Source: Guillardia theta CCMP2712 (taxonomy: Eukaryota; Protista; Cryptophyta). From it: 64,000 nucleotides of DNA. The position numbers and the translations under genes are program-made. The notes under the pieces are model-generated. The model did no database searches. It saw only the letters and a program-made list of their open reading frames with translations, and had not been told where the DNA came from. The stretch spans positions 188,494 through 252,493 of the forward strand of contig NW_005434607.1 of the NCBI RefSeq assembly GCF_000315625.1, given 5' to 3'. Below are positions 12,015-60,772 of the stretch, in pieces; positions within the stretch are counted from its first letter, which is position 1; every line of letters begins with the position of its first letter.

Positions 12015-12233
<219 letters not shown>

Positions 12234-32679: not shown

Positions 32680-33255
32680 ATGTCGCCATGCCCGACTCTC
32701 TCCCTTTCCTGCTCCCCCTGCTCTGTCGACGAGGCCGTCGACGCCCTGTGCAGCCGCCCATGGCGCTCTCCATGCGACGACCTCGACATGGCATCCTTCC
32801 TCTCCTCCTACCTCCACGATACTCCCCTCGTCGCCAAGGAGGCTGCGGTCCAAGCCGACGCGTCAGCGTGCCACGCAGGCTGGGCGGCGGCAGCGGCTGG
32901 CAGGCCTGAGGCCCCGAGCGAGCCGTCAGAGGCGTCGTCTGCGAGCGACAGCGACAGCCCGGCGAGCATCCCGGCGTCCCCCAAGGAGGCGGAGAAGACA
33001 AGGACGCAGTACAACCAGAGCCAGTGGACGCAGGAGGAGCACAAGCGGTTTGTGGAGGCGCTGGCAAGGTACCAGCAGCTGGGGAGCCGACGGGACCCGG
33101 TCACGGGCAAGGTGTCGGTAGGGCTTGGAGCCGGAGTGGCGAAGCAGGTAGCGGCGCTTGTGGGAACGAGGACTCCTCTGCAAGTGAGGACGCATGCACA
33201 GAAGTACTTCATGAAGCTGAGCACGGGGAGCAAGCGAGGGGGGAGGATGCAGTAG
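32680..33255 (+). CDS. Single-repeat Myb (SHAQKYF class) transcription factor, copy 3
   Basis: Near-identical to copy 1, with a few substitutions and a one-codon deletion. Confidence 0.88.
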   Translation: MSPCPTLSLSCSPCSVDEAVDALCSRPWRSPCDDLDMASFLSSYLHDTPLVAKEAAVQADASACHAGWAAAAAGRPEAPSEPSEASSASDSDSPASIPASPKEAEKTRTQYNQSQWTQEEHKRFVEALARYQQLGSRRDPVTGKVSVGLGAGVAKQVAALVGTRTPLQVRTHAQKYFMKLSTGSKRGGRMQ

Positions 33256-34373
33256 GGTAGGGAGGGAGAGGGCGCTGATGTAAATAAAGGAAGTGACGCT
33301 TGCCCGAGAGAGTGCGCCGCACATCCCGCTGACGCAGCAGCGCCGGGAGGGACATTGGTACAGGCAGGTTGGCTGACGAGACCGCTGGGATGGAGGGGAG
33401 AGAGGCTGGGGCTGAGCTGAGGGCGAGGGCATGACGATGGGGAGAGGGAGGATGCTGCAGGCGCAGTGGCTGATCAGATCGGGTCGTGTTGACTAGGCTA
33501 GTCCAGGTGAAATCAAATCTTTGTTATTTTGGTGACATATTGTGTTGTCCAAGAGATGTTGTATCGATCAGCATCAAGTCAGTAGGGAAGGGATCATTGA
33601 CGTCCTGTGGTATCGCATCCTTCTTGCTCGTTGGGACCCTGCATGGCCGAGCGCCGCTCTGCGGCGGCTGTGCATCCTTGTTCGCAAGTTTCTAATGACT
33701 AAAGAGACTTGCAGGCCCGCCTCGGACTGTTCTAGATAGAAGTCGATGAGTAATAATTTTCTGTGATGCTCAGGTCCAGAAAAGCCGTTGAGAAGTCCAG
33801 TGCTAGATCGAAAAAAAACACTCACAACACCCCTCATGGCCTTACAGCCTCAAACTCAGATAATTGAGGGGGTAGTGTTCATGGGTATTTTCGTATGTTG
33901 AGCTCGTGTTCCCCTTGTCCCCTCTGACATGCGAGAGTCAGTGAGCCCTTGGGCCATCCAACACTGATGAATGCGCAACATGAAGGCGGGAGAGCGATTG
34001 AGGAGGGGGGAGGAGACTTACCTCGAGTAAGGAGGAGCTGAAGGAACTAGGCGAGGACGGGAAAGGCTTCGAAAGGCACGCTGAGGAGAAAGAGGACAAG
34101 TGAGGGGTCGATAGAGGTGGAGAAAGAGGAGGAGGAGGAGGAGGAGGAGGAGGATGACGAGGATAAAGACGAAGAGGATGCATGTATATGCAGATACGTC
34201 GGGCAAGACCCCGCGGACTCTGCCAGGAGTTAGAGAAGAACAAGACGATATGACAAAGCTGGACATCGTTTGAGCTGGCAGATGTAAAAATGTTTCCGAT
34301 GATGGCACCAAGATGAAGATGAATATAGAATGCAAGCGTCTAGTTGACAGATGCCTGCAGGCGAATCTCAGCC

Positions 34374-39281: not shown

Positions 39282-39807
39282 GCTGCCGAATCCTCACTGT
39301 CACGCGACTCACCGCCAATCGCCATTGCGCTCTCCCCGTCTCTCTGCGTCTATTTCGGGCAACCCAGGCCCTATCACTGACGGACCCGCCTCGGAGAGAT
39401 CACGGTCGGCAACACTTGGCTCCCGGGGTCACCCGGTGCTGCCTCAGGGCCGAGCCCGGCCTCACTCAGTGAAGTGCCCGGGCCCGGCCCGGAAATAGTT
39501 TTAAGGGCCCGGCGCCAGTGCTCACCGCCTCTTTCACTATCGCGATGGGGGAGAGATGAGGTAGGGCGGCGGGGAGGCATGGTGGATCAACAGCTGTCTC
39601 TGCCTCCTTCAAACCCAAGCCTGTGACTTGAAGACACGTTTGCGGGTGACAACTGAGGTGATTCAAGTTTTGCATCCCCTCCTGCCCCATTCAAGTTCTA
39701 TCTCAGTCCAACCTGCTGTTGCCTGGAGTCAGGCTGGTCTTGAAAGGGTCTTACATTTCACTTGCACCTTCTTCAGGTTTTGAGAATCATTGCAGCGAGA
39801 GAGCAAC

Positions 39808-41221
39808 ATGATGGCGTCAAGATCTCATACCGATCGTCCTAATCGCTCTGTTGTCACTCATCCACCATCATGGGCGCCTCACATGGCCGTCGAGCTAGAG
39901 TTGCAAGGGAAAGTGAGTGCGATGCGCAAGATTGGATTGGTTTTTGAACATTGCAGAAGAAATTTGCTATGATTCGCCTAGAAGACATGTTGTTGCTTAT
40001 GGTAACGAGGTGTTCTGTTGCAGGATGACGACGCTGATGTTGTAGACATGACATGCGCTGTAAAATCGATATCCTGCAATGCTTATGGAACATGCGTTGC
40101 TTGTGGATGCCAGGATGGCAAGGTATGGTCTTCTCTTGCATCCTCATTAACCTCCATCCTTTCAATCCCTACATCTGATCGTTTGAACTTCTTACCCTGA
40201 ATTATCTTCAAAGGTGAGAACTATCAAGATGAATGCGATGGACTGGCAAATCGCGCTTTGCATGGCGCATCATCCTCGTCTTGCGAAGCAAGGTGAGTAA
40301 AACGAGATTATCTTTGAAAATAAGAGAGTCGTCTTGACTGCTTGTTTTTGTCAAGGTTGCTGGCTTTCCTTGCTCGAATCGGAGATTCTAATGCACATAT
40401 GGAAGTTTGTTGCTTCTGATTACTTGATCATTGGTGGAAAGGCTGAATTTGAAGAGCTTTCCGGGCATTCATCGCTCGTATCTTCGGTTTCTTTCAGTCC
40501 CCTGGGCGATATGTTGGCCTCCAGTGCGATCAACAATGAGATCCGGTTGTGGAACTACACCTCAGATGAGAAGAGAAGTGAAGTCATCAAAACATCCGCT
40601 GCCCACAGTGCCATGGTCCTGGCGTTTAATAAGGATGGGAGCCTTGTTGCCTCTGGTGGGCGAGACAGGCGAATCAAATTGTGGTGCACCACAGGGAAGA
40701 ATGAGATCTATGACGCTTTCGAAGGCCATGCCGGTATGATACAGGCTCTTGCGTTTTCTCCAGATGGGAGTTTGCTTGCATCAGGAAGCAGTGATTGTAC
40801 AGTACGGCTGTGGAACATGCAGTCGCTAACATCTTACAGAGATCCTCTCCGTGGCCATTACAGAGGTATCCATGCAGTCGCGTTCTCTCCCGATGGTGTC
40901 CATCTTGCGGCTGGCTCTGGTGACTGCCTCATCTCTGTTTGGCAAGTGGCAACAGGAGAGCCCAAGGCTGAAGCACTGAAGGGACATCTCTCCAGTGTCT
41001 TCTGCCTTGCCTTCTCGCCTGATGGAAGATATCTGGCCAGTGGGGGTAACGATAGAATGGTGAGACTGTGGTGTTGCAGAACATGGCAGCAGGTTCAGAC
41101 CTTCAGAGGTCACAGTTCAGGAGTCTCGTCCGTGGCTTTCTGCAAGGGTGGACTGATCCTGGTTTCAGGAAGTGGAGATGGAACTGTCAGGCTCTGGGAT
41201 TTGAGGCAAAGGATGGGATGA
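39808..41221 (+). CDS. WD40-repeat protein with an inserted F-box-like helical motif
   Basis: Six clear WD repeats (e.g. GHAGMIQALAFSPDGSLLASGSSDCTVRLWN) plus one upstream degenerate blade. Exons splice in phase. Confidence 0.9.
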
Positions 41222-42305
41222 AACTCCTGCAAGATGTCATTCTTCTTCGCTGTTGATCAAACCCCATCAAATCCGTGCTCAACGAGCTACTGCTTTCAAC
41301 GAGTTGTTGTGTTTGGCTGTCGTTCTCTTTCAGGGAGGATTTTGCTTATTCGGACCACCCACTGCCGATATCTAGTTGCAAAGACGCCGTCGTGCTGTGA
41401 CTCTACGTTTCTTACCGTCTTTGCAAAACCATGTAGAGGATAAATACATTAACTGCACAACCATGTAGAGGATAAATCTTTCCCTTTTTTTGACTGAAAA
41501 AGAAGGACAAAACGGAGAAATACATTAACAAGTAAGATGATTTCATCTCTTTGCTTGTGTCCTGCTATCAAATAACCATGTATGACGCACTATCAAATCC
41601 CTCATCATTCCTGTACCATAACTAAACTCCAGCACGAGCAAGTGCTCTGGGAAAGCGCGCAGTGGGAACACTCACGAATACATCTCATCGTAACATCGCA
41701 GTCCATTCGTCGACTTCAGCTGACCCCGCAAGACACCCTGCAATCCTTCAATTGCCGTTTTCAGTCTCCCCACCTCCTGGGCGGCATGGCGGGGAGGAGC
41801 TCTGGATACACTATGAGGTGTTAGTTCGGTTTCAAGTCGACAAGACAGGGGACATGCCCATCCTGCAAACAATTTCCGAAGGCTCGGAAAAGAGCAACGC
41901 AACAATGTGAAACGATGCGTATTGGAGGAGACGGCACTGAAAAGCCTGCCTCAGAGTTATCCAATAAGACGAGCTGCGGCATCAGCACGTGTCAATACCT
42001 GACCAGAGGACAGCAAAATTTTCGAATCCATGAAGAAACATGGGTTCTTTGAATTGAATATTCAAGTCTTAGGTTAAAGAAATATATTCAGTTTTCAAGT
42101 ATCCAATTATACCTCGGAATTTCAACAATTCATACTCCTCTGTCAAAATAGAAATATGGTTGAAATCAAAACCGCTGTCTTTGCAATAGTTCCCTTATTG
42201 CGAGGGAGTCCTGATGCCCAAATCTATCTCTATCTGTAGCTTCTGAGGCCAGCGCTGAACTCACTATTGCCCTCTCAGTTAGCTCCTCGAAAGGAAGGGC
42301 GGGAA

Positions 42306-43495
42306 GGTGCAAAGGAGACAAAGTTTGGAGGGCAACAATACCAAACGATCCATTATTGAAGGTCAAAAAGATGAAAACACAACGATTACGATTGTTGCCC
42401 CCGAACCTTTGCCTCCTTAGCTCCTGCGATTCTTCTGTCATGGCACCCTGTATTTCCTAAAGAAGCAACGATTGGCATTGTTGTGCACTCACCTGTGCCT
42501 CCTTAGCTCCTTACAACGTCATGTTCCTCCGTTGCTGACTGAATCTATTGAAGATATCTGTCAGCAGGTCAGCGTGCTGACACTCGGCTGATGCAAGAAG
42601 GAGCAAAGAAGGCGAACATTCGGGGGCAACAATGAGAATCGTTAGGGTTTCATCTCTGTGCTGACCTAACAAGATTTCACTGGAGCAAAGAAGACAAAGG
42701 TTCGGGGGCAACAATCCCAACCGTCAAGATAAAACAAAACCTTTGGGATTGTTGCCCGTCTACCTTTGTCTTCTTAACTCCTGGTGTCCTCTGGCCGATA
42801 ATTAACTGACGTCAGCAGATAGTCTCGTGTAAGCCTAGCAAAAATGCAACATGAAGTGTTTGGGATTGTTGCCCGTCTACCTTTGTCTTCTTAGCTCCTG
42901 CTCCCTTCCCTGTACCTTTGACGGTTTGGTCAGCGAAAATGGAGCATGACATTCTAAAACCCAATAACAAACGACGTTTGGGATTGTTGCGCGTCTACCT
43001 TTGTCTTCTTAGCTCCTTAAAATGTCATGTTCCTCATTGCAATATGCAGAAATAGAACCGTTGGGATTGTTGCGCGTCTACCTCTGCCTTCTTAGCTCCT
43101 TACTATGTCATGTTCCCTCGCTGCTGACAAACCGATTCTCGATATCTTTGAGGAGATAGGGTTCTGTAAGCCTAGTTTCATATTTTCAAACAACGCTTGA
43201 GATTGTTGCCCATCTACCTCTGCCTTCTTAACTCCTTGTAATGTCATGTTCCACACAAGTTGAAGAAGGATACGCAACGGTTGGGATTGTTGCGCGTCTA
43301 CCTCTGCCTCCTTAGCTCCTTGTGATGTCATGGTCCCGATTCCTGTATGGCAGGCCCTGGAAAAACTCGAAACGGTTGGGATTGTTGCGCGACTACTTCT
43401 GACTTCTTAGCTCCTTGCGTTGTCATGGTCCTCTTCCCCTATGTCATCATCGCAGGAGCAAGAGGCAAGTTTCGGGGGCAACAATTTGAAACGTT
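42306..43495. repeat. Interspaced array of 13 degenerate 44-bp repeats in mixed orientation
   Basis: Consensus AACGNTTGGGATTGTTGCSCGTCTACCTYTGYCTYCTTAGCTCC. Forward copies start at 42381, 42467, 42738, 42855, 42973, 43056, 43192, 43276 and 43371. Inverted copies are at 42306, 42600, 42682 and 43455. Confidence 0.92.
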
Positions 43496-43499
43496 GCAT

Positions 43500-44430
43500 G
43501 CACGGTATGGACCGGGCCTCAGTAGCACGCCGGGCCCGGTCAGTCCAATCGGAATAAACATAACCTTACTAGTTATGGCTTTACTCAAAGTTAAGCCTAG
43601 TACGCCAAAACCCCGGTGACCTTCTTTACTCAAAGTTAAGTTAAAAAGCAGTACGAGGACAATCAGGAGAGTCGAGGAGGCTTGACCCTGACACTGTCGC
43701 ACAGGCCAAACGGCGAGAAGAGAAAAGACAGCGAGAACCAAACCCAATCCTGCCGAACTTCCGAATGCTGTCCCCCAAACTTAACTGACCACTCGTGACT
43801 TCCCCTTTACTCGTGACTACTGATTGTGATCCGCCGCATCTGGCTTATCCTTAGCTCAAAGGATCAGTCATAGAATCACTGGCAGTCATACTAGAATCTG
43901 CCGCGCCAGCCAGTGCCGCAGTCCGTCCGATCATGCTGCGGCACTCCAAGTTCCATCACGGGAAGTTCCGATCACCGATCATATAGCCGCTATGCCGGGT
44001 CCCCGGTCTGATCGGATCAAGACGTGGGAGAGTTGCAAGTCTCTCACAGCCTACATTCGTCAGGACTGAGACAGAGTCACTGGCAAGCCGGAAAGTGAAG
44101 GGAACTTACTCATGATGGAGGGGTCGGAGATTCCATTATCCCAGTCGGAGCCAGAGGCCGATTGACGATGACCGTAACGAGGGCAAAGAGGGCATAGAGG
44201 AGGATTGACATGGTGGGTGGCCTGCGCCGCCCAAAATGCCGCAGACTGGAGGTACGAAGCAGGCCGCGCCGGACCGAGCTCCCTCGTCCGCCCATTAGAC
44301 CGTGTTTTTTTACTGTAAGGTAGTGAATGATTGTTCTCAATCACTGTAGCATCACGGCTTCCTTCCCGAAAGTGCTGATTCCGGAGCAGGGAGCTGAGCA
44401 GCAACTGCCGCCCTCAGGCCTGCCATAATG
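43500..44430. other. GC-rich scrambled intergenic island with the conserved core at 43625-43685
   Basis: TTTACTCAAAGTTAAGTTAAAAAGCAGTACGAGGACAATCAGGAGAGTCGAGGAGGCTTGA. Confidence 0.75.
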
Positions 44431-45192
44431 CTCCTCCAAAACAAGAAGCGGTCTCTCTTAAACGGCTTTCTTCTCATCAGCAAATAACCACATTGATGCA
44501 TTGAGCGGGGGGAGCAGAGTACATTTTAGCATGGGATCCAAACAACTGAGATCTCACATTCGGAAGATCCTTTTTGATTCATGTCAACCCAAGGCTGATC
44601 AAGGTCAGTGTGTCTCTCGGCCTCTCGAGATGCCTCACTGGATCATCCGACTTGTGACCGCATCCAATCCTGAATCTCCTACTGTCTCAAGCTTCCTCGT
44701 CCCCAGTGAAGTTCGCCATGTTCGCAGATGCCGTTCGCTATGCCCGGCTGCCTGCGGGCATGGTGCTTGAAGAGTCTCATCAGATCTTTTACTCAACCAG
44801 ACAGCTGTAAAGAGAGGACGGTTCGGATTGTTGCTGTCTCAACGAAGTAACCTATTGTCCTACTCCCACCGGTGGATACATAGAGTCCTATCTCTAGTAC
44901 CGCTGCCACTGGTAATATATTTTAAACTTTACTTAATGCAATTCTGTACCCTATTTTCGCTGATTCTAGTACTTCCTCTACTTTTAGGGCCGAGACTAAC
45001 GTCCGTTAGCGTATCGCGAAAATATTGCGAACGCAACGAAACGTTTTAGAAATATTGTAAAACGTTTATAACTATTATACAATTTCCAAACGGTGTGTAA
45101 ATTTGAAATAAGTGGGTTTATATATCTACAATGTCATTTATTAAATGTAAGCAGGCCTTGATCATCGTGTGGTAAAGCTGTGTTGTAATAAA

Positions 45193-45221
45193 GAGAATCG
45201 CGAACGACGTTCGCGATTCTC
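45193..45221. other. Perfect 14-bp-arm inverted repeat
   Basis: GAGAATCGCGAACG-A-CGTTCGCGATTCTC. Confidence 0.9.
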
Positions 45222-46288
45222 CGTATCCATGAGATTAAAACTGCTTTTTAATGTATTTGAATTTGTACCAAAAAAATATAGGTCAAAACAGGATGACGAA
45301 ATGGTTTGAAACGTTGTTGAAGGAAAATGTTTCCAAAATGGAATTGTTCGTGTCAGGTTGATATATATCGAAGCAATGCTTGTTTGACAGGGAAAGGGAT
45401 ATCTATTAATTACCCGCCCCCTTTGGAAAGAAAAGCAACGGTTCGCATTGTTGTGGGTGATGCTTTTGTAATTAATTTTCTAAAGATGTTTGCACTGGAA
45501 ATTTTTTGGTTCACGACGATCAAGGAAGGGCGAAAAATTCCACTCAAATTTGAAATTTTTCGGAACAATGCTTTGCATCTCCAAAGTGTTGGTCCCTAAA
45601 CGCGTTCTATTTTGATACAGAAATCGTCCAAATGTTTCAAATCGCGCAAGCACACCCGAGAAAACTTTGAGGTTCGACAAATGAAGAATCAAACGTTCAG
45701 GTTGAAATTTCAAATACAAATGTATATTTTCCTGGATTTCACAGATATTTTCGGAGAGAAAAACAAAAACTGCAAGGGTGCATTCCCATGTTTTTTGTAA
45801 AGTTAATTTCCACAGCAGCAACAATGCTGAACGTCGCGAGATTGAAGCTGAGGCGGGCATGAAAACAAATGCAATCCAAGTAGGGGGTCATCCGACTAAG
45901 TTTTAAGGTGACATATTGAGGGTAGGGGTAGTGAACGGGCCCGTCAAGAGAGAACGCTTCGAATTGTTGCGGGTGTTCGAGCGGGCAACTCCTTGCAAGG
46001 GGAGTGAGAGTGCATCGTTTCGGATTGTTGCTCCTGATGAAATCAACTTCAGTGAAATCACTTTCTTCTCTACTTCGATCCTCCTATCTTGTACCACTCC
46101 TGCGTTCCTCCTTCACTCCTCCTCCGCTTCTTCTTTCTCCTCCTTCTTTCCTTCTTCACTCCTCCTGCGTTCCTTGTCCGCCCCTTCTTATTCCCTCGTT
46201 CGTTTCTCTTTCGCTCCCATTGAAATCTTTACTTTTCTCTGCTGTTTGTACACGTTCCTACCACTTAATCTTTCATCCTAGCTCGACC

Positions 46289-49200
46289 CTCAGTGCAGCA
46301 GATCTGAAATCTCCTGCTCTCAAGGTCAGCAATGACATGAGCTTGTCCTACCCCCCCATCACCTCCTGCAGGTTGTGCCTGCGCATGAAGGGCGTGGTCA
46401 ACAAGCTTCCTAGCTGTGACAAGTTCGCAGTGATCTGTCAGGGATCAATTGCGTCAGGAGGAGGAGCTTGCTGAGAGCAAGGAGTTTACCTGATCTAGCT
46501 GGGTCAAGCTCCCAAACAACCCCCACACCTGCGCACTGTCATCTTCAACCGCTACATAGCATCGATCCCACGTTGGTTGCGACTGCCTCCTTGCCCCCGC
46601 GTCCTGTCCGTTGGTCTTCCTGCGATGTTTCCACCGCTTCGCTGGACAGGGAAGTCAGACAGTGAGATGAAGGTACATGATAGCAAGTGATGGTGGTAAT
46701 GATGGTAGCCAAAAACGAGGTGGATGAGGATGAGGATGAGGAGGAGAAGGAGAAGGAGGAGGAGGAGGGTAGAGGAGGAGGAGGAGGAGGAGGAGGAGGA
46801 GATCAGCTGATGAGCTTCAGGAGGGCGACGAGATGGAGGGGTTAGGGAAGAGAGGTCATTACCTTGCCTTCCGCTTCATCCCCGCAGTTTGATAGCGATT
46901 GGCGTCCAGATTCTCTTCCACGTGATCCTCCTCCGACATGTACCGAGCGGTCGCATGCCGCACAGACCGCGCGACATTCTCCATGCCCTCCCGCTCGCTC
47001 AGGATCATCCGTGACAGCTCATGGAACATCTCCATCTTCTCCGTTCCTGCGGGGCATACGCGTCAAGGGATTGCCATGGCTGACCCGATCCAGCGCACCG
47101 AGAATGTCGATGCTTCCTTGAGCCTCGTCGTCCTCCTCGTCGAAGGATAGAGACTTGATCACCCCCTCCTCCCCCTCCTCCTCCAAGTTGCTATCTATCC
47201 TGAAGTTTGCAGGGGAAGCACTTCGAACGAGAGAATTCCGTCCCTGCGACCGTGACGCCCTCCTGCTCATCCTCTCTTCCTCCACGTCCGTGTCAAGAGT
47301 CCATGCCTGCGACAAGCGAGGGAAGCGCGCTCCAGCAAACTGCAAAGCTGCACAGCATCATCAGTTCAGGAAGGGAGGAGGAGGAGGAGGGAGAAGACGA
47401 GCATAGTATAGGAGGAAGGACGACAGCAGCCTTACTGTGATGAGAGACAACAGGGATCATCAGCTCGCATTCTCGAAGTTCTGCGATCCTTGCAAGCAGG
47501 ACATCCTGGTCGCCGTCAGCGTCTCTTTCTCCTCCTCCTCCTCCTCCTCCTCCTCCTCCTCTGTTACCTGCAGCGCTTGCCATGCTGTTCGACGCCAGCA
47601 CCGCATGTCGGCGCCCTTGGCTGCGTTGAAGGAGGCGTTCAAGTTGACCAGCAGCGGAGGAGCAGGCCCCCCCTTGCGCTTTGCCTCGATTTTACTCTCA
47701 GTGTGCATTTTCAGGAGCTTGATGCAGGAATCCTTGACTAGCTGGAGCTGGAGGATAGAGAAGGAGAGGTCAACGACTTGTCCTCAGAACTTCTGTCACT
47801 CACTGTGCTAGAGTCGTCCTTCCCGTCCTCTCCCCCTGGGAGGAGCTGCTCTAGCAGATCTCTTGCAGGCTTGCCGGTGAATTTGATCCTCTCCTTGACC
47901 CCCTGCCACCTGACATGCGATCGATCCGAGACAGCTGGAGGAGGGTCAGCAAGACACCAGCGAGACTCTGAGAGCAAGGGGGACGGTCGAACTTTGCCCA
48001 TGTGAGGAACAGAGCAGAAATTGAAACAGTCTGCAAGCAAGCAGGACAGAGAGAGGGAAGGAAGGCGGGGGAAGGGACTAAGTACGGATGGATGGAGGGA
48101 TGGAGGGATGGAGGGATGGAGGGCAATTGGCGATCAAAAGCAAACGAACCTCTCTCAACCTCCTCAACGATCGCCAGGGTCCGATCGCAAGCAGCGACAA
48201 AAACTTGGAGGAGGCCGACTCGTATGCTGGGGAGGAGGATGAGTTTGAGCTTGTCGCACGGGGATTCACCTTCTCATCCTCATGCTCTCCACTTGTATGT
48301 TGCTTGTTGCAGACAACCAGAGAGAAAGGAGAACGTCCGCCACCTCCTGGCGGCAGAGGAGGAGAGGACGAGGAAGGGATCCGAGTAGCCAGCCCTTGGC
48401 GGTGGGCAACGCAGGGGAGCAGCTGCTCCCGTCCTCGTCGAAGTGCCGGCAGAGGCCGAGTAGGAAGTCGTGAGATACGGTGACGGAGACGTTGCGGAGG
48501 GAGAGGAGAAGAGCACATCCAGCCTCGCACACTTCTGCAGAGCTCATGCAGAAGAAACGGACCAGGAGCCGGTGCTCCACGGAAGACAACACGCGACTGA
48601 GGAGCGAGCGGAGGCGGCGGTGAAGCTCCTCCTCGCCTCCGGCAAGCCGAATCAGCTGCGAGAAAGTCAGCAGAGGGCGAGAAGGCTGAGGAGGAGAAGG
48701 AAGAAAGGAAGAAGGAGAAGGGGACGAGCATGTAGGGGAAGGGGGGCAGAGATTGAGTACAGGAGGAAATGGGGTAAGACGGAACCTGTGCTGAGGCAGG
48801 AACCAACACCGCAAGAGGTACCAGCATGCGTTCAGCAGTATCTGCAAAGCGCGTGAGATGAAATGAGATCAGACAGCGGGAGGCGGGGAGGTAGAGGAAG
48901 ACAAGATAGAAGAGGACCAGTAATGTGCTTCTCGATGGTGCTCCTCGCCGCCTCCATCTCCTCTCCTGCCTCCTTGCAAGCCTGAAAACGAGCAAGTAAC
49001 TTCAGGAAGCAAAGGAAGCAGCTACATGCCTTCTCCACAGACTCTCCGAGCATTGGGCCCAGCAAGAGCGTCGCAGCTGCGGGAGCTTCTCTCCTCCCTC
49101 CTCCTGCCTTCCCCATCTTGTCCTTCCCTGGCGGCTTGTGCGCGAGGGAGAAGGAATGCAGACTCGAGATGTGAACTTGATGAAGCGCATGAGCATGAGA

Positions 49201-52050
49201 TCTCGATTGCACTCCCTGCTTCCAATCCTCCTCTCCCTCCTCCTCTTGCTCTTCCTCGCCCCCTCTCTCCTCCGCAATCCACTCAGGCCCGTCTTCATCC
49301 TCTGCGGCCCCGTGGCGACGATGATCGTGTAGCTGAAGGCACGGCAGTTATGCAGGGCAGAGGAGGCGAGGAGTCGAGACAAGGGAGAAGTCAGGCAGCA
49401 CAAGCTTACCTTGAGCACTAGGTCTCCTCTGATCCAAACCCGCTCCTCCTGCTTCTCCTCCTCAACATTGGGGGGTTGAAACAGGGAGGAGGCAGACGCC
49501 TCGTTGATCTCGTGCTCCCTGCTCCTGTTCTTCCTCCATAGCCACTCGTCCATTGCCCGACACAGCAAAGCGCGGAATTCACGAGGGTCCCTCCTCCGTG
49601 AGGAGGGGGGGGAGACGAAGAGGAGAGAGGATCGGAGGCTCGTGGGCAGCACGACCTGAGCCCCCTTGACTAGTACCTTCCTCCTCCTCCCTTCGTTCAG
49701 CGACATCGCTTCGTCCATATGTACTTGCAGCTGAATTTCCCCCTCGCTGCCTCCTCCTGCCCCTGCCCCTGGTACGAGGACGCTGCCGGCAAGGTGTACT
49801 TGCGGGAACTTCGATAGAAGGAGATGCCCGACATGAGCATTGCTAGCTGAAACATGGAACGTGCAGTTGATGAGGGAGGAGGAGGAGGAGGAGGAGGAGG
49901 AGGAGGAGGAGGAGGAGGAGGAGGTCCTGATAATGACCAAACTATCCTCCTCCTGTTTGAGCATCTTCGACAAGCCCCCCCTCGTGACGTGGCAGAGCAT
50001 CTCCGCCGTTTTCTCCTCCTGCCCAGCTGGGATCGAGCTGGGATCAAACAGCTCCAGCAGCACATCTAGCTGGACGTAGGCTGCCCTCTGAAACGTCTCC
50101 GAAGTGAAGGAAGTTGAAGTCAACCTGAGCATGAGGGATGAGTGTGAAAAGGAGAGAGAGAGAGGGAGAGAGAGGAGAGGAGAGGAAGGGGTTGATGTGA
50201 GAGGGAGGAGGGAGGGAGGAAGGGAGGAAAGGGGGGAGAGAGGGAAGGAGCGAGGAGGGGAGGGAGCGAGGGAGGGAGGAGCAGAGAAAGAGAGCAACAC
50301 GAAGCAGGGGAGAGGATCGACGGGAGGAACAGCAGGGACAGTCGTAGCAGGAGTGAAGGGAGGAGCAAGGGAGGGAAGGAGGACGAGGCTGATCACATGC
50401 TTCTCTTGGCCGCGAGCTCCATCCTTGAGATCGCCTGCTCTTTGACATTCCGCGACTGCAGGAACCTGATGGTGTCTTCGGAGAGGGAAGGGAAGGAGGC
50501 GTTGTAGGATCCAACGCCCCAGTCCTGCAGCTCCTTCTCGTCTCCCCCCAGCAGCGGGTTCATCTTCCTCCTCTTCAGCCTCTCTGCCTTGAACGCAAAC
50601 TCGTCGTTGACCTCCTTCACTCTGCAGCAGCAGTCACTCGGAGTCGCTCTCCTCCTCGTGCTCTTCTTGTTCCTCCCCTTCTCCTCAATCTTCGTCCTCG
50701 TCCTCGTCCTCTCCCTTGTCCTCTCCCTCCTTCGTCGTCGTACCTCTGTGAGATCTGAGCAAACAAAGCTCTGCATGACTCAAGGTGGGCGGTCAACGCC
50801 GCCTTCATCTGCTCCGCCTTCTTCTTCCCCTCCTCCCCGTCTCGTGCACGGGGCTCGTAGAGATCTCCCCTCCTCTCCTCCTTAAGACGCTGCAGAGATC
50901 GCAGGGACTCCGCGGAGAGGCCGAGGAGCTCCTCGACCCTCCTGATCTCCATCTCCACCTCCGCCATTACCGACGAGCATTTCTCTCTTACCTGCCCCCG
51001 CAAGCTTCTTGTCAGCACTTGCTTGCACAACAAGTGTACGAGCTGTCTTCGAGCTCCTCTCCTCTCTGCTTCCCTCTTGCTTCTCTCTCCTCCGTACCTC
51101 CCCTCCCCTCCTCTCTCTCTGCATTCCTCTTGTTCCCCTCTCCTCTTTCTCACCACATAGAGCGAAGGGAGTTGTAGTGAATGCAAGTCACTTGTTGTCT
51201 TCTCAACTTCCTTGAGAGTCCTTGCCGTCTTCTCCTCAACCTCCTGCCTTGCTGTTACCCTCTTGCCACCACCACCACCTCCTCCTCCTCCTCTCTTTCC
51301 TCCCCCCCCCAACCCCTTTCCCCCTCCTACCTTGACAGCAGACAGGCCCTTCTTCACCGATTCATTCAGCTGCTGGAAACGGGAGAGGATCGCGTTCAAG
51401 TGCTCCTCCTCCATCTTCTTCAACGTGGCCTCGAACATGGTCACCTGGACTCATCGCTCAGGGGTGAACGACTCGAAGTCTCGACTTACCTCCCTCCTCC
51501 TGCCCGTAACGATGTCCTCTATCCTCGCTATGCTGTTCTTCATCCAGCTTCTGATGCTCTCGAGCAGGTCCACGTTGGTCGAGATCCCCGACATGTCAAG
51601 TTTCTGAAGGACAGTTAGGCTACGATATGAGAGCAGGAGGACGGGGCTACACCAAGAGGAGGGAGGGGAAGAGGAGGAAAGAGGAAGGAGGAAGGAGGAT
51701 AGGGAAAGAGAGAGAGATGAGGATAAGGCGAGGCTGGGGGGACGGAGGAGTGGGGGTCAAGGAGGATGGAAAGGAGTTGGAGGCGTGAAGAAAGAAGGGA
51801 GGGGCATGGACTTGGAGGTGGGCAGGGAGGTGGGCAGGGAGGTCTGGTGAGGAGCACAGAGAAAAGGGAACAGGAGGTCTACAAGAGGCGGAGCAGGGCA
51901 AGGAGGAGCGAGAGCAGGAGCAAGAGCAAGAGGGCTGAGAGCGGGACCAACCTGGGCCTCGTCGAGGAGGTTGGTGGTGTTGGAGATGCAGTGCAGCCTC
52001 TCGCTCGTCATCTTGTGATATTCCTTCTCGCTCAGCTGCTGCTTCCCCTC
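46289..52050 (-). CDS. Multi-exon coding region, probably the C-terminal continuation of the Sac3/GANP gene (could be a separate gene)
   Basis: A continuous series of splice-bounded exons with coiled-coil and helical segments. The terminal exon is EISDLLH*. No obvious intergenic break was seen. Confidence 0.55.
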
Positions 52051-52254
52051 TATCACTGTGCACTTTGAGTTCTCCTGCCATCCAGCAGGTCCAAATCAGT
52101 TCTAAGCTCCAATATTCCCTCTTTGTTACACCCCCCCAACTCGCTACCCCCCCCCCCCCCCCCCCCCACCTCCTCCTTTCCGCCTTCTCCCTTCTGCTCC
52201 TAACCCTCCCCAACCATTCCCACCATATCCTTGCTTCCCTCCCCTTCATACAAG

Positions 52255-52972
52255 TACTTGCATACCAGCTCAACTTTTTGCAGGATGCCTTTCATAGTCG
52301 ACTCGATGCTCCGCAGTTTCGCTTCATCCTGCTTCTCTTGCGCCTTTCTCCTCGCCTCCTCCTCTTGCCTCTGCCTCTCCAACAACTCGGCCTTGCGCTT
52401 CTCCTCTTCCTCTCTCTTCCTCGCTTCCTCCGCCCTCCTCTTCTCCTCCTCCGACGGTACAACCTGCCCAGGGTCAAACACCTCCTTTCAACCTCCGACG
52501 CCTCTGCCATCACCTGAGGCGGCGGAGCCGGAGCAGGACGAGGGGACTGAGCAACGGGCTCGACAGGTCGGGGACTAAAGGATGAAAGTAAGGAGGACAA
52601 GCCAGCCTTCTCCAGCTGACGAGCAGAAGCAAAGGATGTGCCCGTGTCCTTGCCGATGGATACAGGGGGCTCTAGAGCAGCCTTCGTGGGCAGTTGAGCA
52701 GGAGATGGCTTCAACACTTGGGGAGGAGGAGCGACTTTCTGCTGCTGCTGGCTGCTCAACGGAGCGAAGTCGGAGGGGGATGCGATCGCATCCCCCACCA
52801 CCTCGCCAGGCACGGCAGGCATCTTCTTGGTGATGAAGGAAACCTGAGCAGATGCGCATCAGGGAATGAGCCGTTGGAGGAGAGACGATGGCGAGGCCAA
52901 GGGATAGGACATGGATGACGAAGGGAAGAGGTAGTAATGAGCTGGAGGAGGAAGGAGCAGAAGGATCAGGGA

Positions 52973-53026
<54 letters not shown>

Positions 53027-56000
53027 AACAGGGATGCTAAGAAACGAAAGATGGGCGGGGGGAGGGGGTAGAGAACAGGGGAATGGAACTATAGAGGCAG
53101 ACCTTCTGGACGTCACAGAAATCGAGATCGGAGCTGAGCTTTGCCCGGTGGAACTGCACTGCCCCATCCTTCACCTCCATCCCCTTGCTCGTCAGGAAGG
53201 CCTCGGCAGCAGCGTCGTCCTCGAAGCCAAGCCTCCCCTTCAGCCCCTCCACCCTCTCAGCCGCCTCGTTCCTCGCCGCCCTGCTGCAGATGATGGCGTC
53301 CAGCGCTCGGATCCTCATGGTGGGGAAGTACTGGTGGAGGAGGGCGAGGAGGAGGTAGGGAACCCGATCCCCTCTCGCCAAGCGGAAGAAGCGAACGTAG
53401 TTGCCGTCCTCGATGCAGGCAGCGAGGTCGACGGCAAGGCAGACGAGAGGATGGGAGCGGAGGGGCCGGTCGAGGGAGTGGTACATCTCCTGGATGGACG
53501 ACTGGTAGTTCTCCCGCATGGCGAGGACGAGAATGTAGTAGGAGGTAAACTCGGCCTCCGCAGGCGGCCGCATGTTCCTGCTGCGCATCTCCGGGTAGAC
53601 GTCCTTGACGAGCTTGCATAGGTTCTTGTAGATGTAGTCCTCGTGCGAGCCCATGCTCGTTCCTCCTTGGGAGCAGCGGGAGAATCCGATGCTCTCCTTC
53701 TTGCCCATCTGATCCACGAGTGAGGGAGGGAGCGAAGAGGAAGCGAAGGGGGGGGGAGGGTGAAGGAGGAGGAATTGGTAATCGAAAAAAGGAGGAAAGA
53801 GAAGTAGAGGAGGAAGCAAAATATGAGGAACAAGTGGAGCAGAGAAATAAGAGGAGGAGCAGGAAGAAGCGTTCAAACATCCACCTGGTTTGTTATTCCG
53901 TGGGTCTTGAGTCTCTCTGCTGCCCAATCTTTCCCCCTCGCCATCTCCACGCACATGTCTTCGGCAAGCCGGTAGTGTGCATCTAGCGCTATGCGCAGGA
54001 CTCGCTCGAAGACGCTGGCGATGGCGGGGGAGGGAGGGTAGTGGTCATGCAGGAAAGCCATATCGGAGCTGATGGCCTTGATGACGTCATGGAGGACCTT
54101 GTAGACACCGACGTATCCCCCGGGACATCGCTCCATCATCTCTCGCTTCATCCACAGCCTCCTGCAGTGATCAATGGTGTCGTGCATGGCCTGAAGCGTC
54201 CTCATGTCGCTTCCAGCGTGCGCAGCTCCCGCTCCTCCTCGGTGAAACTCGTAGCGGCAGACGACGAGGGCAGGCCAGGAGGGCTCGAGAGTTTCGCTGT
54301 CTCGCTCCATCACCGAGAAGGCAAAGTTCCCACGAGAACGCCGATCGTCGAACTCCTTCTTGGAGCACATGTAGGGGCACGTGGGAGCCTTGCTCTCGCT
54401 GGCTCCTCCTCCTCCTCCTCCTCCTCCTCCTCCTCCTCCTCCTCCTCCTCCCTCTGGCTCCCCCGCCGCCCAGGATGGGTCGACCATCTCGTCTTGCGCT
54501 ACTGCAACAACTTGCTTCTGTACCGTAGGAGGGGGGAGAATGGAGGGAGACGTGATGTCGACTTTTGAGTGAGCCATGTCTTCTTCATACGCCTTCGCTT
54601 CAGCCGCCATTCTCTCCTCCAGCTCCTTGGCTGCTTGCTGCTGCTCAGCACGTCTGCATGCTCTGCACTTGAAGGGACCGTCCTGATGGCCAAAGTCGCT
54701 CGCCTCTACCCGCTTGCACCTGGAGCATGTCTTCATGTAGTCTTCCTCTTTCTCCTCTCCCCCTCCCTCGAGGATCTCAATCTTCTCTTGCGATCCCCTT
54801 CCCTTCTTCATGGGAACTTCGGGGGCTGCTGCGGGCTGCTCTTTTGCAACCGTCATCTTTGCCCTCGTCGATCTTGACTGCAGCCCTTGTGACATCAACG
54901 TCTCCTTGACTGTCATCTCAAATGTCACGCGTCGAGCAAGAAGCTGCGTTGATCGCATACCAGGATCATTGCCTTCTTGCTTTGCCTTATTCTGTAAGAA
55001 AAAATACAGATGGAAGGAAGAAACAGCGGGGGAGACGGGAGAAGTAAGGAAGGGAAAACACAAGAGAAAGGGAAAACTGCAGATTCAGGGTCGAACAACT
55101 CGCTAGACACAAAATCTCACAGGTTGCTTTGTCACTTGCTGACTCTTCTTTGCTTCCAACTTCGCTCTCCCGCAAGCTGTACGGGCATACTCGTCTGCCA
55201 AAGATTTCTTGTCCTCACCCTTGGCCGTGATCCCGTACATCTCCTCCAACGTGTAGTAGATGTCATCCTTGAACACAATCGTCATCTCTTTCCACGAGTC
55301 CCTTCAACATGCTACCTCAGATATGTTCTGATCTCGCATGATCGCTTTCGCCAGCCCTCCCACATTTGTCATCAGCAGGTCGTACTGCATCAAACGAGCA
55401 TCAGACCATATCCTCCTCCTCGCCCTCCCACTCACTTGAGTCAGGGGGCAGAAACGAAATTGACACTCCTCCTGCTCCTCCTCCTGCGGTGGGTTGCCGC
55501 CTGACTCCAGCGGGTCTTCGTATCCTTGCGCTGCTACGAATTTGGTCGTGGGGGGGAGGCGAGGAGGAGCAGCCTTCACTTCCCTGCTGAGCGATCAAAA
55601 ACAAAATTCTGTTACAAGACAGCAGCACATGCGGGATTCTTGGATCGGCTGCTCCTTCGGCCCTTGCTCCACCCTTGCAGCATCGTTGGGCTTTACGGCA
55701 GCCTTCCTAAATGTCTTGTCTGCCATGGCCAACAATCAGCGGGTCCTAGCGGCATGTCCACCACTCACTCTTGAACTTGGTAGCCCCTGCGCTTGCAGTG
55801 CCAAGTCCATTCCCAGCATTGCTAGAGTCATCTGTGCAGTACTCACACACCAGCTCATCTGGCTCAAACAAAGAAATACCACTGCCAGAGTGTGCAGATC
55901 TCTTGGTAACCAACCCACTTCCTGTATTCCCAAACGCGCTTCCTGTATTCCCAAACGCGCTACTAGCGTTCCCGAAAGCGCTTCCTGTGTTGCCAAACGC

Positions 56001-58714: not shown

Positions 58715-60772
58715 CTCTATTGAACGAATGCCCAGACTAGTTGCGCAAAATCTGTAAACCACACGGAAGAAAAGGTCACTAATCTGTCAAACAGCGGAAG
58801 CCTCTACAAAACATCAGTGCCTGCCTGCTCTTTGAGCCTTTTAACTATCTCAAGATTTCTTCCTGCAAGTCTTCATTCCGCAGCCATGGAGCATTCCACT
58901 ATCATTCGAACAAGTCGTAGCCAATACCCTACGTCCCTCTGCTCCTCCAGTTCCCTCTCTGCGAGTTGTCATGACAGCCTCATCCTCATGGCCTAAGCGC
59001 CCGATGGCGGAGTAGCTGCAGCTGTTTCCCGGTAGGGGTCACTGCCAGCCTGTGAATGTGAAATATTGGCGAAAGGATACAAGATTGAGACCTAAATCAA
59101 ATATTTTCATTAAGGGGTCTCTCATGCACAACTTATTCAAATTGATACTATAAAATCGTAATTAGACAATACAATTTCCTGATTTTCAGATAATTGCATG
59201 ACAAAGGTACCCTTGAAATCAATACGTAAAAACAAGAAATATATTTAAGAAATGTTTTTGGTATCAAGATATTATTACAAATTTCAGTCAAATACATTCA
59301 GTCACTAAAATATTGCAGATGCGAGTCTTCTTTAGGAAAAAAAAGTCCATTGCGAGGACCACCACTTCCACCCCCCAAATCCATTCCCAATCATGATACC
59401 CTACCCGATTGAGTCGTTCCCAAGTACCCTACCCTCCCATGCCCATGTAAACTTGCTTACACTGGTACATATAGCTATCACCCCCTCTGGGGTTTCTGTG
59501 GATATTTTGCAATGGGAACTAGTACCCCACCCCCTTCCAGTCACACTTATTATTATCGCTTCCACAGATTCCTACCCTTCTACGTCTTGCAGGTGCTCCA
59601 TGCCACCTCCCCCTTTACTGCCCCACCCCTCTGATTCATTTTCTTACTCCACCCACTCATTCTCTTGACTACCCCCAATATGTCTTCATACTACCCTGAT
59701 AGAATCCTCTATACCCTACCCCATACAGCAAAACGACCACCTCTCATCACCACCCCGATTGTTTCCTTATATGGGTGGTGGTGGGGAGGGAGGGGAGGGC
59801 GGGGGGGGGGGGGGGGGGGGGGTTTAACATTACCCTCTCCCAAAAACAAAACCTACCTACCCTCGTGCTATGAGACCCATAACATGACCCCTCCCCGATA
59901 AAAACCCGACCCGCCTCACTGTCAATCACTACCCCTACTGCAATGCTTGAATTTTTGGGTGCTCTGCTACTTGCAGCTTTCAGCAGAGAGGAGGCCATAC
60001 GATTGACACAAGTACCGGTACTTTTCCCATAGATATCACCCCGTGATGACTCCAAACGTACCATGGTTGGGGCCTCTTGAAACTACCAGCGGAAACCGCT
60101 ATGCAATGGTAGGGTAGTCCGAATACAATTTTGCATCGTTTGGCATTGTTGCGGGGTAGAGCGTTGTCTTTTGCAAGTCTACTGCGCACCGCTTCGATTG
60201 TTAAGATCATTATTAAACACGATGAATCACAGGAGGTAACACAAAATAAAAACATATGATTTGGTCGAGCCTGCCTCATCAGTACTGATGGACCAGTCGG
60301 TTACCATTGTTTTGACGGTTATCAGGAGATCCGTTACCTGTGAAGTGATGTGACGGTTACAGTCAGAATTCCTGAAGGGGTGGGGTATTTTTGAGGTCCG
60401 AAAGGGGGTGATAACTGATGAGGGTAGGGTATGGAGGGTTGGGTAGTGGGAAATATAGCTGTCATACAAAACTGTGGGAGGTAGTGAATTGAAGGGGGTG
60501 TGAAGTCAACAGGGTGGGTAAGAGAAAAGAATGAGGCCTCAAGGCCTAAGGATAGTCATGTTTCCATAGCGATATATGGAGAAAATCTCGGAATAGTCTA
60601 GGCCATAGCAAGTGATGGGGGTCATGGGGCACAGGGGTACTTGAATATTCGGTAATGAGTAACGGGGGTAGGGTACTGGATGGTAAATTTAGAAGGGGTT
60701 CGCGGACTGTGGGGGGTGGGGTATATTTCTTACAAGATTAGACAGGTAGGGAGGAAAGAGAACCGACCAGCC

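What the first reader, a model, noticed from the sequence alone, without database searches (positions are those of the whole stretch)
42306..43495. Interspaced 44-bp repeat array in both orientations within a gene-free interval
Seen: 13 copies of a 44-bp unit (9 forward, 4 inverted) separated by mostly unique spacers of about 13-92 bp. There are two subtypes: ...TTGCSCGTCTACC (forward only) and ...TTGCCCCCGAACC (mostly inverted). Many forward copies carry an extension TTNNNNTGTCATGKTCC. The interval lies between two convergent genes, with no nuclease, recombinase or transposase recognisable in the window. The repeat-spacer layout is unlike a simple satellite, and mixed orientation is unlike CRISPR. 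Inference: a cluster of sites for one sequence-specific protein (centromere/origin-like locus, transposon sub-terminal repeats or recombination sites), or a processed non-coding RNA array.
Basis: partly seen in the sequence, partly recalled or inferred. Interest (0 to 1): 0.85.

Follow-up and report, generated by a model that had tools for sequence, protein, structure and literature searches.

The report
Cryptophyte interspersed palindromic-motif repeat array
A 1.2-kb stretch of non-coding DNA in the alga Guillardia theta holds 13 copies of a discrete 47-64-bp module built around a 20-bp near-palindrome and separated by unrelated spacers; it is most likely a cluster of protein-binding sites of unknown role, and not a CRISPR-like, transposon, satellite or RNA-gene array.

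Summary
There are thirteen units (9 forward, 4 inverted) at 42306-43495, none elsewhere in the window and none expected by chance. The window is Guillardia theta CCMP2712 nuclear DNA (JH993031.1:230,799-231,988 for the array). The array lies between convergent genes.

New findings:
- Each unit has three blocks: a 20-bp near-palindrome M (GCAACGnTTnnnATTGTTGC), a 17-bp block 2, and an ATGTCATGKTCC block 3.
- Identity drops from about 85% inside units to random (26-34%) within a few bases of their edges. Spacers cannot be aligned.
- M also occurs alone at six sites across 41.9-46.0 kb and once at 60.1 kb.
- Forward units are in phase with the DNA helix (10.55 bp, P about 0.02).
- Single units have no RNA structure, and the palindrome arms show no covariation.
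- There are no Rfam, protein, viral or transposase matches.
- No copy was found in 72 kb of other G. theta DNA.

Best reading (confidence 0.4): a DNA-level array of sites for sequence-specific factors, made by local duplication and inversion. Its function is unknown. Rival readings are a neutral complex repeat (0.3), a hairpin or small-RNA locus (0.13) and a transposon remnant (0.1). Whether it is a centromere or origin could not be tested here. Interest is moderate.

The parts
42306..42352 (-). Unit R1 (inverted, divergent type II); M motif at 42333-42352
42378..42445 (+). Unit F1 (type II middle CCCCCGAACC, degenerate block 3). Forms a hairpin-capable inverted pair with R1.
   Evidence: (z -4.8)
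42464..42527 (+). Unit F2 (divergent middle TGCACTCACC) with block 3 GTCATGTTCC
42600..42646 (-). Unit R2 (type II)
42682..42728 (-). Unit R3 (type II). With F3 it forms a near-perfect inverted repeat of about 45 bp, 42677-42790.
   Evidence: (dG -62 kcal/mol, z -8.8)
42735..42781 (+). Unit F3 (type I)
42852..42898 (+). Unit F4 (type I; 33/34 identical to F3 in the 34-nt core, spacers unrelated)
42970..43033 (+). Unit F5 (type I) with block 3
43053..43116 (+). Unit F6 (type I) with block 3
43189..43252 (+). Unit F7 (type I) with block 3
43273..43336 (+). Unit F8 (type I) with block 3; best match to the unit profile
43368..43431 (+). Unit F9 (type I) with block 3
43453..43498 (-). Unit R4 (type II, 3-nt deletion in block 2)
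42262..42286 (+). Probable truncated extra copy (ATTG..CCCTCT..CAGTTAGCTCC), tail to tail with R1
   Evidence: TTAGCTCC at 42279; read directly
41900..41919 (-). Isolated M motif
44814..44833 (+). Isolated M motif; inverted partner of the 45819 site, 979 bp away, flanking the AT-richest kilobase
   Evidence: (I13)
45434..45453 (+). Isolated M motif
45819..45838 (-). Isolated M motif (1 mismatch)
45950..45969 (+). Isolated M motif
46011..46030 (+). Isolated M motif
60132..60166 (+). Only M site outside the domain. By eye the similarity extends into block 2 (TTGTCTTTTGC); this is not a scored match. It lies 636 bp upstream of a phycoerythrin-alpha gene, in a divergent promoter region.
42533..43129 (.). 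Secondary spacer motif TGCTGAC/GTCAGCA (6 copies, 0.32 expected), including a perfect CRE-type palindrome CTGACGTCAG at 42806
39567..41540 (+). Left neighbour: 5-exon WD40-repeat gene, 3' end 766 bp before the array
47112..47708 (-). Right neighbour: start of an NCBI-called gene (265 aa) that runs leftwards past 47112

Best explanation
The array is a DNA-level cluster of binding sites for one or a few sequence-specific proteins.

Each unit is a composite module with three parts:
- a 20-bp near-palindrome M (GCAACGnTTnnnATTGTTGC), the kind of site a dimeric DNA-binding protein recognises;
- after a subtype-specific stretch of about 10 bp, a 17-bp block (CTYTGYCTYCTTAGCTCC);
- in the younger copies, a third block (ATGTCATGKTCC).

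How it arose and is kept (inferred): the module was multiplied locally by duplication. Segment inversions produced the orientation blocks R|FF|RR|FFFFFFF|R. The blocks have been kept while everything between them has randomised. This implies selection on the blocks, possibly helped by short-tract gene conversion.

Forward modules sit on the same face of the helix, which would favour cooperative loading. The array is the densest part of a 4.2-kb gene-free domain (41.9-46.0 kb) peppered with M sites.

Shown: the anatomy, the sharp conservation boundaries, the phasing, the absence of RNA structure and of coding potential, and the restriction to this locus in what could be searched.

Inferred: that proteins bind here and that the binding matters. 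What the array is for (regulation or chromatin organisation, origin, segregation) is not established.
For: - The motif is enriched about 40-fold: 23 hits against 0.58 expected, 19 of them within 41.9-46.03 kb. The 8-mer ATTGTTGC occurs 18 times in the window, 17 of them in the domain.
- Units occur in both orientations, and M also occurs without the rest of the unit. Orientation independence is typical of DNA sites, not of RNA elements.
- Mean pairwise identity among F3-F9 is 79% in M, 84% in the linker and 88% in block 2. Block 3 is 87% in F5-F9. The adjoining 25 nt on either side are at 26-34%, which is random. Spacer alignments are no better than shuffles, z -1.5 to +1.9. F3 and F4 are 33/34 identical in the core yet have unalignable spacers.
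- The GCAAC/GTTGC arms are 80% complementary, but with 0 compensatory changes and no excess over shuffles. Sequence is conserved, not a hairpin.
- Forward units are phased at 10.55 bp (R 0.77). This is the best period anywhere between 9 and 13 bp, P about 0.02.
- Single units fold worse than or equal to shuffles on both strands, z +0.4 to +2.4. There is no Rfam family.
- Spacers are enriched for a second palindromic, bZIP-like motif, TGCTGAC / TGACGTCA.
- The one outlying copy sits in a divergent promoter region.
Against: - There is no direct evidence of binding and no candidate protein.
- The phasing statistic is marginal. It holds only for forward copies (all 13 units: P 0.15).
- The whole case for constraint rests on one locus in one genome. 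No orthologous locus could be compared.
- Short-tract gene conversion confined to the homologous cores could mimic selection.
- A position between the 3' ends of convergent genes is not where promoters or enhancers of a compact genome are usually expected.
- Transcription could not be assessed properly.
Confidence: 0.4

Rival explanations
1. Neutral complex repeat. A short segment was copied repeatedly nearby, in both orientations, by replication slippage, template switching and unequal exchange. The cores are kept similar only by short-tract gene conversion. The array has no function.
For: - Spacers of F2, F3 and F6 keep traces of a longer ancestral period of about 135 nt (GCTGAC..GATATCT..AGATAG..TGTAAGCCTAG).
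- Neighbouring units are the most alike.
- This genome window is full of other local tandem repeats.
- The family is locus-restricted in the 130 kb examined.
- There is no sign of transcription or of homologues.
Against: - Identity falls from about 85% to random within a few bases at both unit edges.
- No pair of spacers is alignable, even between units that are 97% identical.
- M recurs on its own up to 2.5 kb away from the array within the domain, and once 17 kb away.
- Forward copies are helically phased.
- Neutral duplication should copy the spacers too.
Confidence: 0.3
2. Non-coding RNA locus. The region is transcribed. The long inverted pairs (R1/F1, F2/R2, R3/F3) give hairpin RNAs that are diced into small RNAs. 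The remaining units act as complementary targets or as linear protein-binding motifs in a long non-coding RNA.
For: - R3/F3 folds into a stem of about 45 bp (-62 kcal/mol, z -8.8). R1/F1 gives z -4.8.
- That hairpin gives a sub-threshold hit to a microRNA precursor model (E 0.08, 23.6 bits against a gathering score of 64).
- Units are unusually unstructured, as accessible target sites would be.
Against: - Mixed orientation means only some units would be in the sense orientation on any one transcript.
- No unit pattern was found in the JGI collection. That collection holds at least part of this organism's transcriptome under another tool, but whether the DNA scan covers it is unknown.
- No ORF from the region is on record in transcript-derived protein sets.
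- Any inverted DNA repeat folds as a hairpin, so the fold is not independent evidence.
Confidence: 0.13
3. Transposon remnant. The units are sub-terminal transposase-binding repeats, or clustered MITE or foldback copies, of a DNA transposon whose coding part is lost or lies elsewhere.
For: - Repeats in direct and inverted orientation with a palindromic core resemble the sub-terminal repeats of CACTA, hAT and Harbinger elements (established knowledge).
- R1/F1 and R3/F3 look like 100-120-bp foldback elements.
- M sites at 44819 and 45819 are inverted around an AT-rich kilobase.
Against: - No transposase, integrase or reverse-transcriptase domain was found in 50 ORFs.
- No target-site duplications flank the inverted pairs or the units (read directly from the sequence).
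- There is no matching array in the opposite orientation elsewhere in the window.
- No copies were found in 72 kb of other G. theta DNA.
- There are no arrays in 2.9 million viral contigs.
Confidence: 0.1
4. Small coding units. Each unit would encode a conserved signal-like peptide (+ strand frame LGLLRVYLCLLSS) followed by a variable peptide. Alternatively each unit would be an alternative 5' exon on the - strand ending at the conserved AG|GT.
For: - Three variable positions in block 2 fall at third codon positions of the + strand frame and are synonymous.
- F4 gives a 32-aa ORF with a signal-like start.
- AG|GT is kept in 10 of 13 units, and F2 reads CAG|GTGAGT.
Against: - Start codons, frames and stops are inconsistent between copies. 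F7, F8 and F9 are stopped within or right after the unit. Three of six - strand ATG ORFs stop after 3-4 codons.
- The - strand has stops in all three frames of the conserved part in most copies.
- The 79-aa ORF has no real homologue among 1.84 billion representatives.
- No ORF from the region is on record.
Confidence: 0.03

Closest known systems
Arrays of binding sites that act in plasmid or episome maintenance and replication: EBV oriP family of repeats, yeast 2-micron STB repeats, bacterial iterons and parC (from established knowledge)
   Same: About 5-20 copies of a 20-60-bp unit carry a dyad-symmetric site for a dimeric protein. They are packed into 0.3-1.2 kb, and copies tend to be phased on one face of the helix.
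   Different: - Those arrays are head to tail with little or no unique spacer.
- They sit on extrachromosomal elements next to the gene for the binding protein.
- Here the spacers are unique and of variable length, orientation is mixed, the locus is chromosomal, and no partner protein is known.
Sub-terminal repeats of DNA transposons (En/Spm-CACTA TNPA sites, Ac AAACGG motifs, Harbinger Myb-protein sites)
   Same: Short motifs are repeated in direct and inverted orientation over a few hundred bp, with unique sequence between them.
   Different: - Those motifs are 6-20 bp long, not 47-64 bp.
- They come as two arrays at the element's ends, with terminal inverted repeats and target-site duplications.
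- They belong to dispersed families. None of this was found here.
CRISPR arrays
   Same: The layout is repeat-spacer, with conserved repeats of about 45 bp and unique spacers.
   Different: - This is a eukaryotic nuclear locus.
- 4 of 13 repeats are inverted.
- Spacers range from 9 to 89 nt.
- Repeats are only 60-90% alike.
- There are no cas genes.
- Spacers match nothing else in the window. They were not searched against viral sequence.
MITE-derived hairpin and microRNA-like loci
   Same: Two or three inverted unit pairs fold into long, near-perfect hairpins of pre-miRNA size.
   Different: There are no target-site duplications and no dispersed family. Most units (F4-F9) have no inverted partner nearby.
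Minisatellites and decayed tandem repeats
   Same: The origin is local, neighbouring units are the most similar, and some spacers keep traces of a longer ancestral period.
   Different: Homology is confined to sharply bounded modules. TRF detects no tandem array. Orientation is mixed.

Membership tests
CRISPR array | All repeats in one orientation, nearly identical, with spacers of uniform length | tested here: not met
   4 of 13 units are inverted; unit identity is 46-90%; spacers are 9-89 nt
CRISPR array | Prokaryotic or viral genome with cas genes or a leader nearby | tested here: not met
   The window is Guillardia theta nuclear DNA with spliced genes; no nuclease domains were found in 50 ORFs
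Satellite / minisatellite | Head-to-tail copies homologous over the whole period | tested here: not met
   TRF finds nothing in 42306-43495; spacers are not alignable; only partial traces remain in F2/F3/F6
DNA-transposon sub-terminal repeats | Transposase gene, or a second array in the opposite orientation marking the other end | tested here: not met
   No such Pfam domain; the unit profile finds no other array in the 64 kb
DNA-transposon sub-terminal repeats | Dispersed copies of the element in the genome | tested here: inconclusive
   0 units and 0 M sites in 72 kb from three other scaffolds. That is only about 0.1% of the genome; the whole assembly could not be searched.
MITE / foldback element | Terminal inverted repeats flanked by target-site duplications | tested here: not met
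   Inverted pairs exist, but the flanks of 42299-42431 and 42677-42790 share no duplication (read directly)
Known structured RNA family (Rfam) | Match to a covariance model at the gathering score | tested here: not met
   0 hits at gathering; only mir-335 at 23.6 bits against a gathering score of 64, on the R3/F3 hairpin
Structured RNA gene array (any) | Units fold better than shuffled sequence, or show compensatory changes | tested here: not met
   z +0.4 to +2.4 for four units on both strands; 0 compensatory changes in the M arms
Homotypic cluster of protein-binding sites | Short motif strongly over-represented locally, in both orientations, also occurring without the surrounding repeat | tested here: met
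   23 hits against 0.58 expected; 14 on the + strand and 6 on the - strand among the 20 sites taken as genuine; 7 isolated sites
Homotypic cluster of protein-binding sites | Dyad symmetry of the site, and phasing of sites | tested here: inconclusive
   The GCAAC..N10..GTTGC arms are 80% complementary. Forward units are phased at 10.55 bp with P about 0.02, but all 13 units give P 0.15.
Homotypic cluster of protein-binding sites | A protein that binds the motif | not testable with these tools
   Needs EMSA, DAP-seq or pull-down
Centromere | One locus per chromosome, occupied by CenH3 and the kinetochore | not testable with these tools
   No whole-genome DNA search or ChIP data were available. 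The literature search found nothing on cryptophyte nuclear centromeres.
Centromere | Exceptional base composition relative to the rest of the genome (as in diatoms and Plasmodium) | tested here: not met
   The array itself is 42-51% GC. The nearby 36% GC kilobase is matched or exceeded by other loci (33% in L006).

The most novel reading that the evidence does not exclude
The 4.2-kb M-motif domain, with the 13-unit array as its core, is a chromosome-maintenance element of the cryptophyte host nucleus. It would be a short sequence-defined centromere or a replication origin, specified by phased, cooperative binding of a dedicated dimeric DNA-binding protein, and present about once per chromosome. 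It would be the first sequence-defined element of this kind outside fungi.
Probability: 0.07. Interest if true: 0.85.

Novelty: new variant of a known kind. Interest (0 to 1): 0.4.

Why it matters
Nothing is known about cis-acting chromosomal elements (promoters, origins, centromeres, boundaries) in cryptophyte nuclei. Guillardia theta is the reference genome for this lineage.

A module with a clear 20-bp near-palindrome, sharp conservation boundaries and helical phasing is a ready-made bait for finding a sequence-specific DNA-binding protein.

If similar domains turn out to occur once per chromosome, the finding would point to a sequence-defined centromere or origin. If the locus is unique and unbound, it is an example of how gene conversion can imitate constraint in a complex local repeat.

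Tried and rejected
- **CRISPR-like array:** rejected on orientation, spacer sizes, organism and absence of cas genes.
- **C/D and H/ACA snoRNA, spliced-leader, tRNA-like and Pol III readings:**
  - No C/D boxes and no conserved Sm site.
  - ARAGORN and Rfam were negative.
  - Only 5 of 13 units are followed by a T-run.
  - A- and B-box resemblance is weak.
- **Coding readings (signal-like peptide on +, MTxQGAKKAEV on -, alternative 5' exons ending AG|GT):** frames and stops are inconsistent, and there are no homologues.
- **Searches for more copies:**
  - Two degenerate unit patterns in JGI metagenome/transcriptome contigs gave 0 hits.
  - The unit pattern in IMG/VR gave 0 hits.
  - The M pattern in IMG/VR gave 88 single, chance-level hits and no arrays.
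  - Sequence strings searched in the literature returned only unrelated primers.
- **Exact look-up of 20 ORFs from 42.1-47.7 kb in the 15-billion-protein collection:** none is on record.
- **Rebuilding the right-hand gene model to fetch the annotation around the array:** no solution with up to two introns, so this was dropped.
- **Spacers against the rest of the window:** only chance matches of 11-18 nt.
- **RFX X-box, Myb and HMG/Sox resemblances of M:** these are leads from memory only. The half-site order and spacing do not fit an X-box.
Full report
**Where the window comes from**

The window is eukaryotic.
- The ORF at 40334-41221 is the last exon of a five-exon WD40 gene. Its exons are 39567-39659, 39775-39916, 40024-40124, 40211-40294 and 40352-41540, joined by GT-AG introns of 57-115 nt.
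- I mapped it with a 100%-identical MMETSP/JGI transcript.
- An EamA transporter ORF is 100% identical to GUITHDRAFT_88716 of Guillardia theta CCMP2712.
- Its NCBI scaffold JH993031.1 (464 kb) aligns to the window at 100% identity. Scaffold coordinate = window coordinate + 188,493, so the array is JH993031.1:230,799-231,988.
- The DNA is not human.

**Check of the observation**

All thirteen copies exist at the stated places.
- F1-F9 lie on the + strand. R1-R4 are inverted.
- Degenerate 34-nt patterns give 11 hits where none is expected in 100 shuffles, and none elsewhere in 64 kb.
- A profile HMM of the 13 units recovers exactly these 13 at E 2e-19 to 2e-10.
- The subtypes are as described: type I TTGCSCRTCTACC in F3-F9, type II CCCCCGAA in F1, R2, R3 and R4, with R1 and F2 aberrant.
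- The extension is as described. GTCATGKTCC occurs six times in the window, all in the array.
- Tandem Repeats Finder sees no tandem array here.
- The neighbours are convergent. The WD40 gene ends at 41540 (+). An NCBI gene call (265 aa) starts at 47708 on the - strand.
- Fifty ORFs from across the window gave WD40, kinase, Myb-like, ankyrin, EamA and SAC3/GANP domains, but no transposase, recombinase or nuclease.

**Anatomy of the unit**

Read on the + strand, a full unit has five parts:
- M: (GC)AACGnTTnnnATTGTTGC
- a subtype-specific stretch of about 10 nt
- block 2: CTYTGYCTYCTTAGCTCC
- about 7 variable bases
- block 3: ATGTCATGKTCC

Mean pairwise identity among F3-F9:

| Segment | Identity |
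|---|---|
| M | 79% |
| Linker | 84% |
| Block 2 | 88% |
| Block 3 | 60% (87% among F5-F9) |
| Next 25 nt | 26% |
| Preceding 25 nt | 34% |

The last two values are what unrelated sequence gives.

- Global alignments of the unique parts are no better than shuffles, z -1.5 to +1.9.
- Short-word BLAST between spacers finds only block 3 and a 9-mer, TAAGCCTAG.
- F3 and F4 are identical at 33 of 34 core positions, yet their spacers cannot be aligned.
- Traces of a longer ancestral period of about 135 nt survive in the spacers after F2, F3 and F6 (GCTGAC..GATATCT..AGATAG..TGTAAGCCTAG).

The array therefore began as a tandem duplication. Since then only the modules have stayed alike.

The orientation pattern is R | F F | R R | F F F F F F F | R. 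All type II units sit in the mixed-orientation left part or at the right edge. Type I units form the uniform right part and are most similar to their neighbours. This fits an older, repeatedly inverted set plus a younger forward expansion.

**The motif reaches beyond the reported interval**

- The 15-nt core CGNTTNNNATTGTTG, allowing up to 1 mismatch, has 23 hits in the window against 0.58 expected.
- Besides the 13 units there are isolated copies at 41900(-), 44819(+), 45439(+), 45819(-), 45955(+) and 46016(+), and one at 60137(+).
- ATTGTTGC occurs 18 times in the window. Seventeen of these lie between 41899 and 46031.
- AAACGTT is also enriched in the flanks of the array.
- The array is therefore the dense core of a 4.2-kb domain inside the gap of about 5.6 kb between the two called genes. 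That gap gave no Pfam hit and no ORF on record.
- The 60137 site lies in a divergent promoter region, 636 bp upstream of a phycoerythrin-alpha gene. By eye it also shares part of block 2.
- Spacers in the array are enriched for a second, bZIP-like motif: TGCTGAC occurs 6 times against 0.32 expected, and there is one perfect CTGACGTCAG.

**DNA element or RNA?**

- Four single units, folded on both strands, are no more stable than shuffles, z +0.4 to +2.4.
- Only the inverted pairs fold well. R1/F1 gives z -4.8. R3/F3 gives a 45-bp stem, -62 kcal/mol, z -8.8. Any inverted DNA repeat would do the same.
- Rfam gives nothing at gathering. It gives one sub-threshold microRNA-precursor hit on R3/F3.
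- No tRNA or tmRNA was found.
- The arms of M (GCAAC / GTTGC) are complementary in 80% of cells over 20 sites. There is no compensatory change and no excess over shuffled partners. The sequence is conserved, not a stem.
- The centres of the nine forward M sites are in phase with a period of 10.55 bp (resultant 0.77). This is the strongest period anywhere between 9 and 13 bp, with P about 0.02 after scanning 10-11 bp. Adding the inverted copies removes the signal, P 0.15.

Mixed orientation, occurrence of M on its own, dyad symmetry and phasing all point to recognition of double-stranded DNA by protein.

**Coding readings**

- On the + strand one frame reads LGLLRVYLCLLSS. The three variable positions of block 2 are synonymous third positions in it.
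- On the - strand, six units begin ATG ACA. Ten of the 13 units keep AG|GT.
- Against coding: starts, frames and stops differ from copy to copy, and several of the best-conserved units are stopped at once.
- The 79-aa ORF that spans F8 and F7 has only two marginal hits among 1.84 billion representatives. The better of the two was rechecked by pairwise alignment and did not hold up.
- None of 20 ORFs from 42.1-47.7 kb is in the 15-billion-protein collection.

I reject the coding readings.

**Is it part of a dispersed family?**

- Unit patterns are absent from the JGI contig collection. Whether that scan covers this organism's transcriptome is unknown.
- They are also absent from IMG/VR.
- M gives 88 single, chance-level hits in IMG/VR and no arrays.
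- I fetched 72 kb of other G. theta DNA from three scaffolds through exact protein look-ups. It holds no unit and no M site.
- This rules out a very abundant family only. The full genome could not be searched.
- No terminal inverted repeats or duplications bound the domain.
- The AT-richest kilobase of the window (45.0-45.8 kb, 36% GC) lies in the domain, but other G. theta loci reach 33%.
- The literature held nothing on cryptophyte nuclear centromeres or on this repeat.
- A small-RNA data set for G. theta exists and could be mapped (PMC6461891).

**Verdict**

The feature is real, non-coding and, in what could be searched, nearly confined to this locus. It is unlike a satellite, a CRISPR array, a recognisable transposon or any Rfam family.

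The explanation that fits most observations is a DNA-level array of composite binding sites that has been kept while its spacers randomised (confidence 0.4). A neutral complex repeat homogenised by gene conversion remains a serious rival (0.3). A hairpin or small-RNA locus (0.13) and a transposon remnant (0.1) are less likely.

Whether it serves regulation, replication or segregation cannot be decided from sequence. The centromere or origin reading is kept as the novel case, at low probability.

Noticed in passing
window 29788-33511: Three tandem copies of a 1.32-1.43-kb unit, 99-100% identical over at least 300 nt. Each carries an ORF with the start of a Myb-like DNA-binding domain, so this is a very recent triplication of a small Myb-like gene. 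Any link to the AACGG-containing M motif is pure speculation.
   Followed up: partly
window 60773-61608 (+): Phycoerythrin-alpha gene with three introns. Its first exon has only 12 nt (MSAK). The signal peptide ends in the cryptophyte AFAP motif. Upstream lie a unit-like M site (60132-60166) and four CGGTTAC/CCGTTAC motifs (60298-60360).
   Followed up: partly
window 39567-41540 (+): The WD40 gene is supported by a full-length MMETSP transcript (382 aa). However, no NCBI G. theta protein appeared among the listed homologues, so the reference annotation seems to lack it or to model it differently.
   Followed up: no
window 53037-53954 (-) and 47708-55980: An ORF with a clear SAC3/GANP domain (E 4e-25) lies in an 8-kb stretch where the fetched annotation lists no gene. 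The long low-complexity ORFs at 48-51.5 kb may belong to the same unannotated gene.
   Followed up: no
window 55807-56457: About 30 copies of a 21-nt tandem repeat overlap a called 108-aa gene on the + strand, so it is probably a repetitive coding region.
   Followed up: no
window 8460-11394: Duplicated kinase-gene segments (98-99% identical blocks at 8460/11056 and 9109/9880). Two kinase fragments encoded by the window are in the protein collection (P0216, P0217).
   Followed up: no
window 11999-12230, 13587-13872, 14078, 15865: A long (GA)n tract, a 38-nt tandem repeat (6 copies) and runs of N (assembly gaps). This part of the scaffold is repeat-rich and incompletely assembled.
   Followed up: no
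window 45188-45226: A near-perfect 19-bp-arm palindrome (ATAAAGAGAATCGCGAACG / CGTTCGCGATTCTCCGTAT) in the AT-richest part of the domain, among several AAACGTT motifs.
   Followed up: no
window 43579-43640: Two exact copies of CTTTACTCAAAGTTAAG, 45 bp apart, just right of the array. The first is followed by TAAGCCTAG, the 9-mer shared by the spacers after F3 and F6.
   Followed up: no
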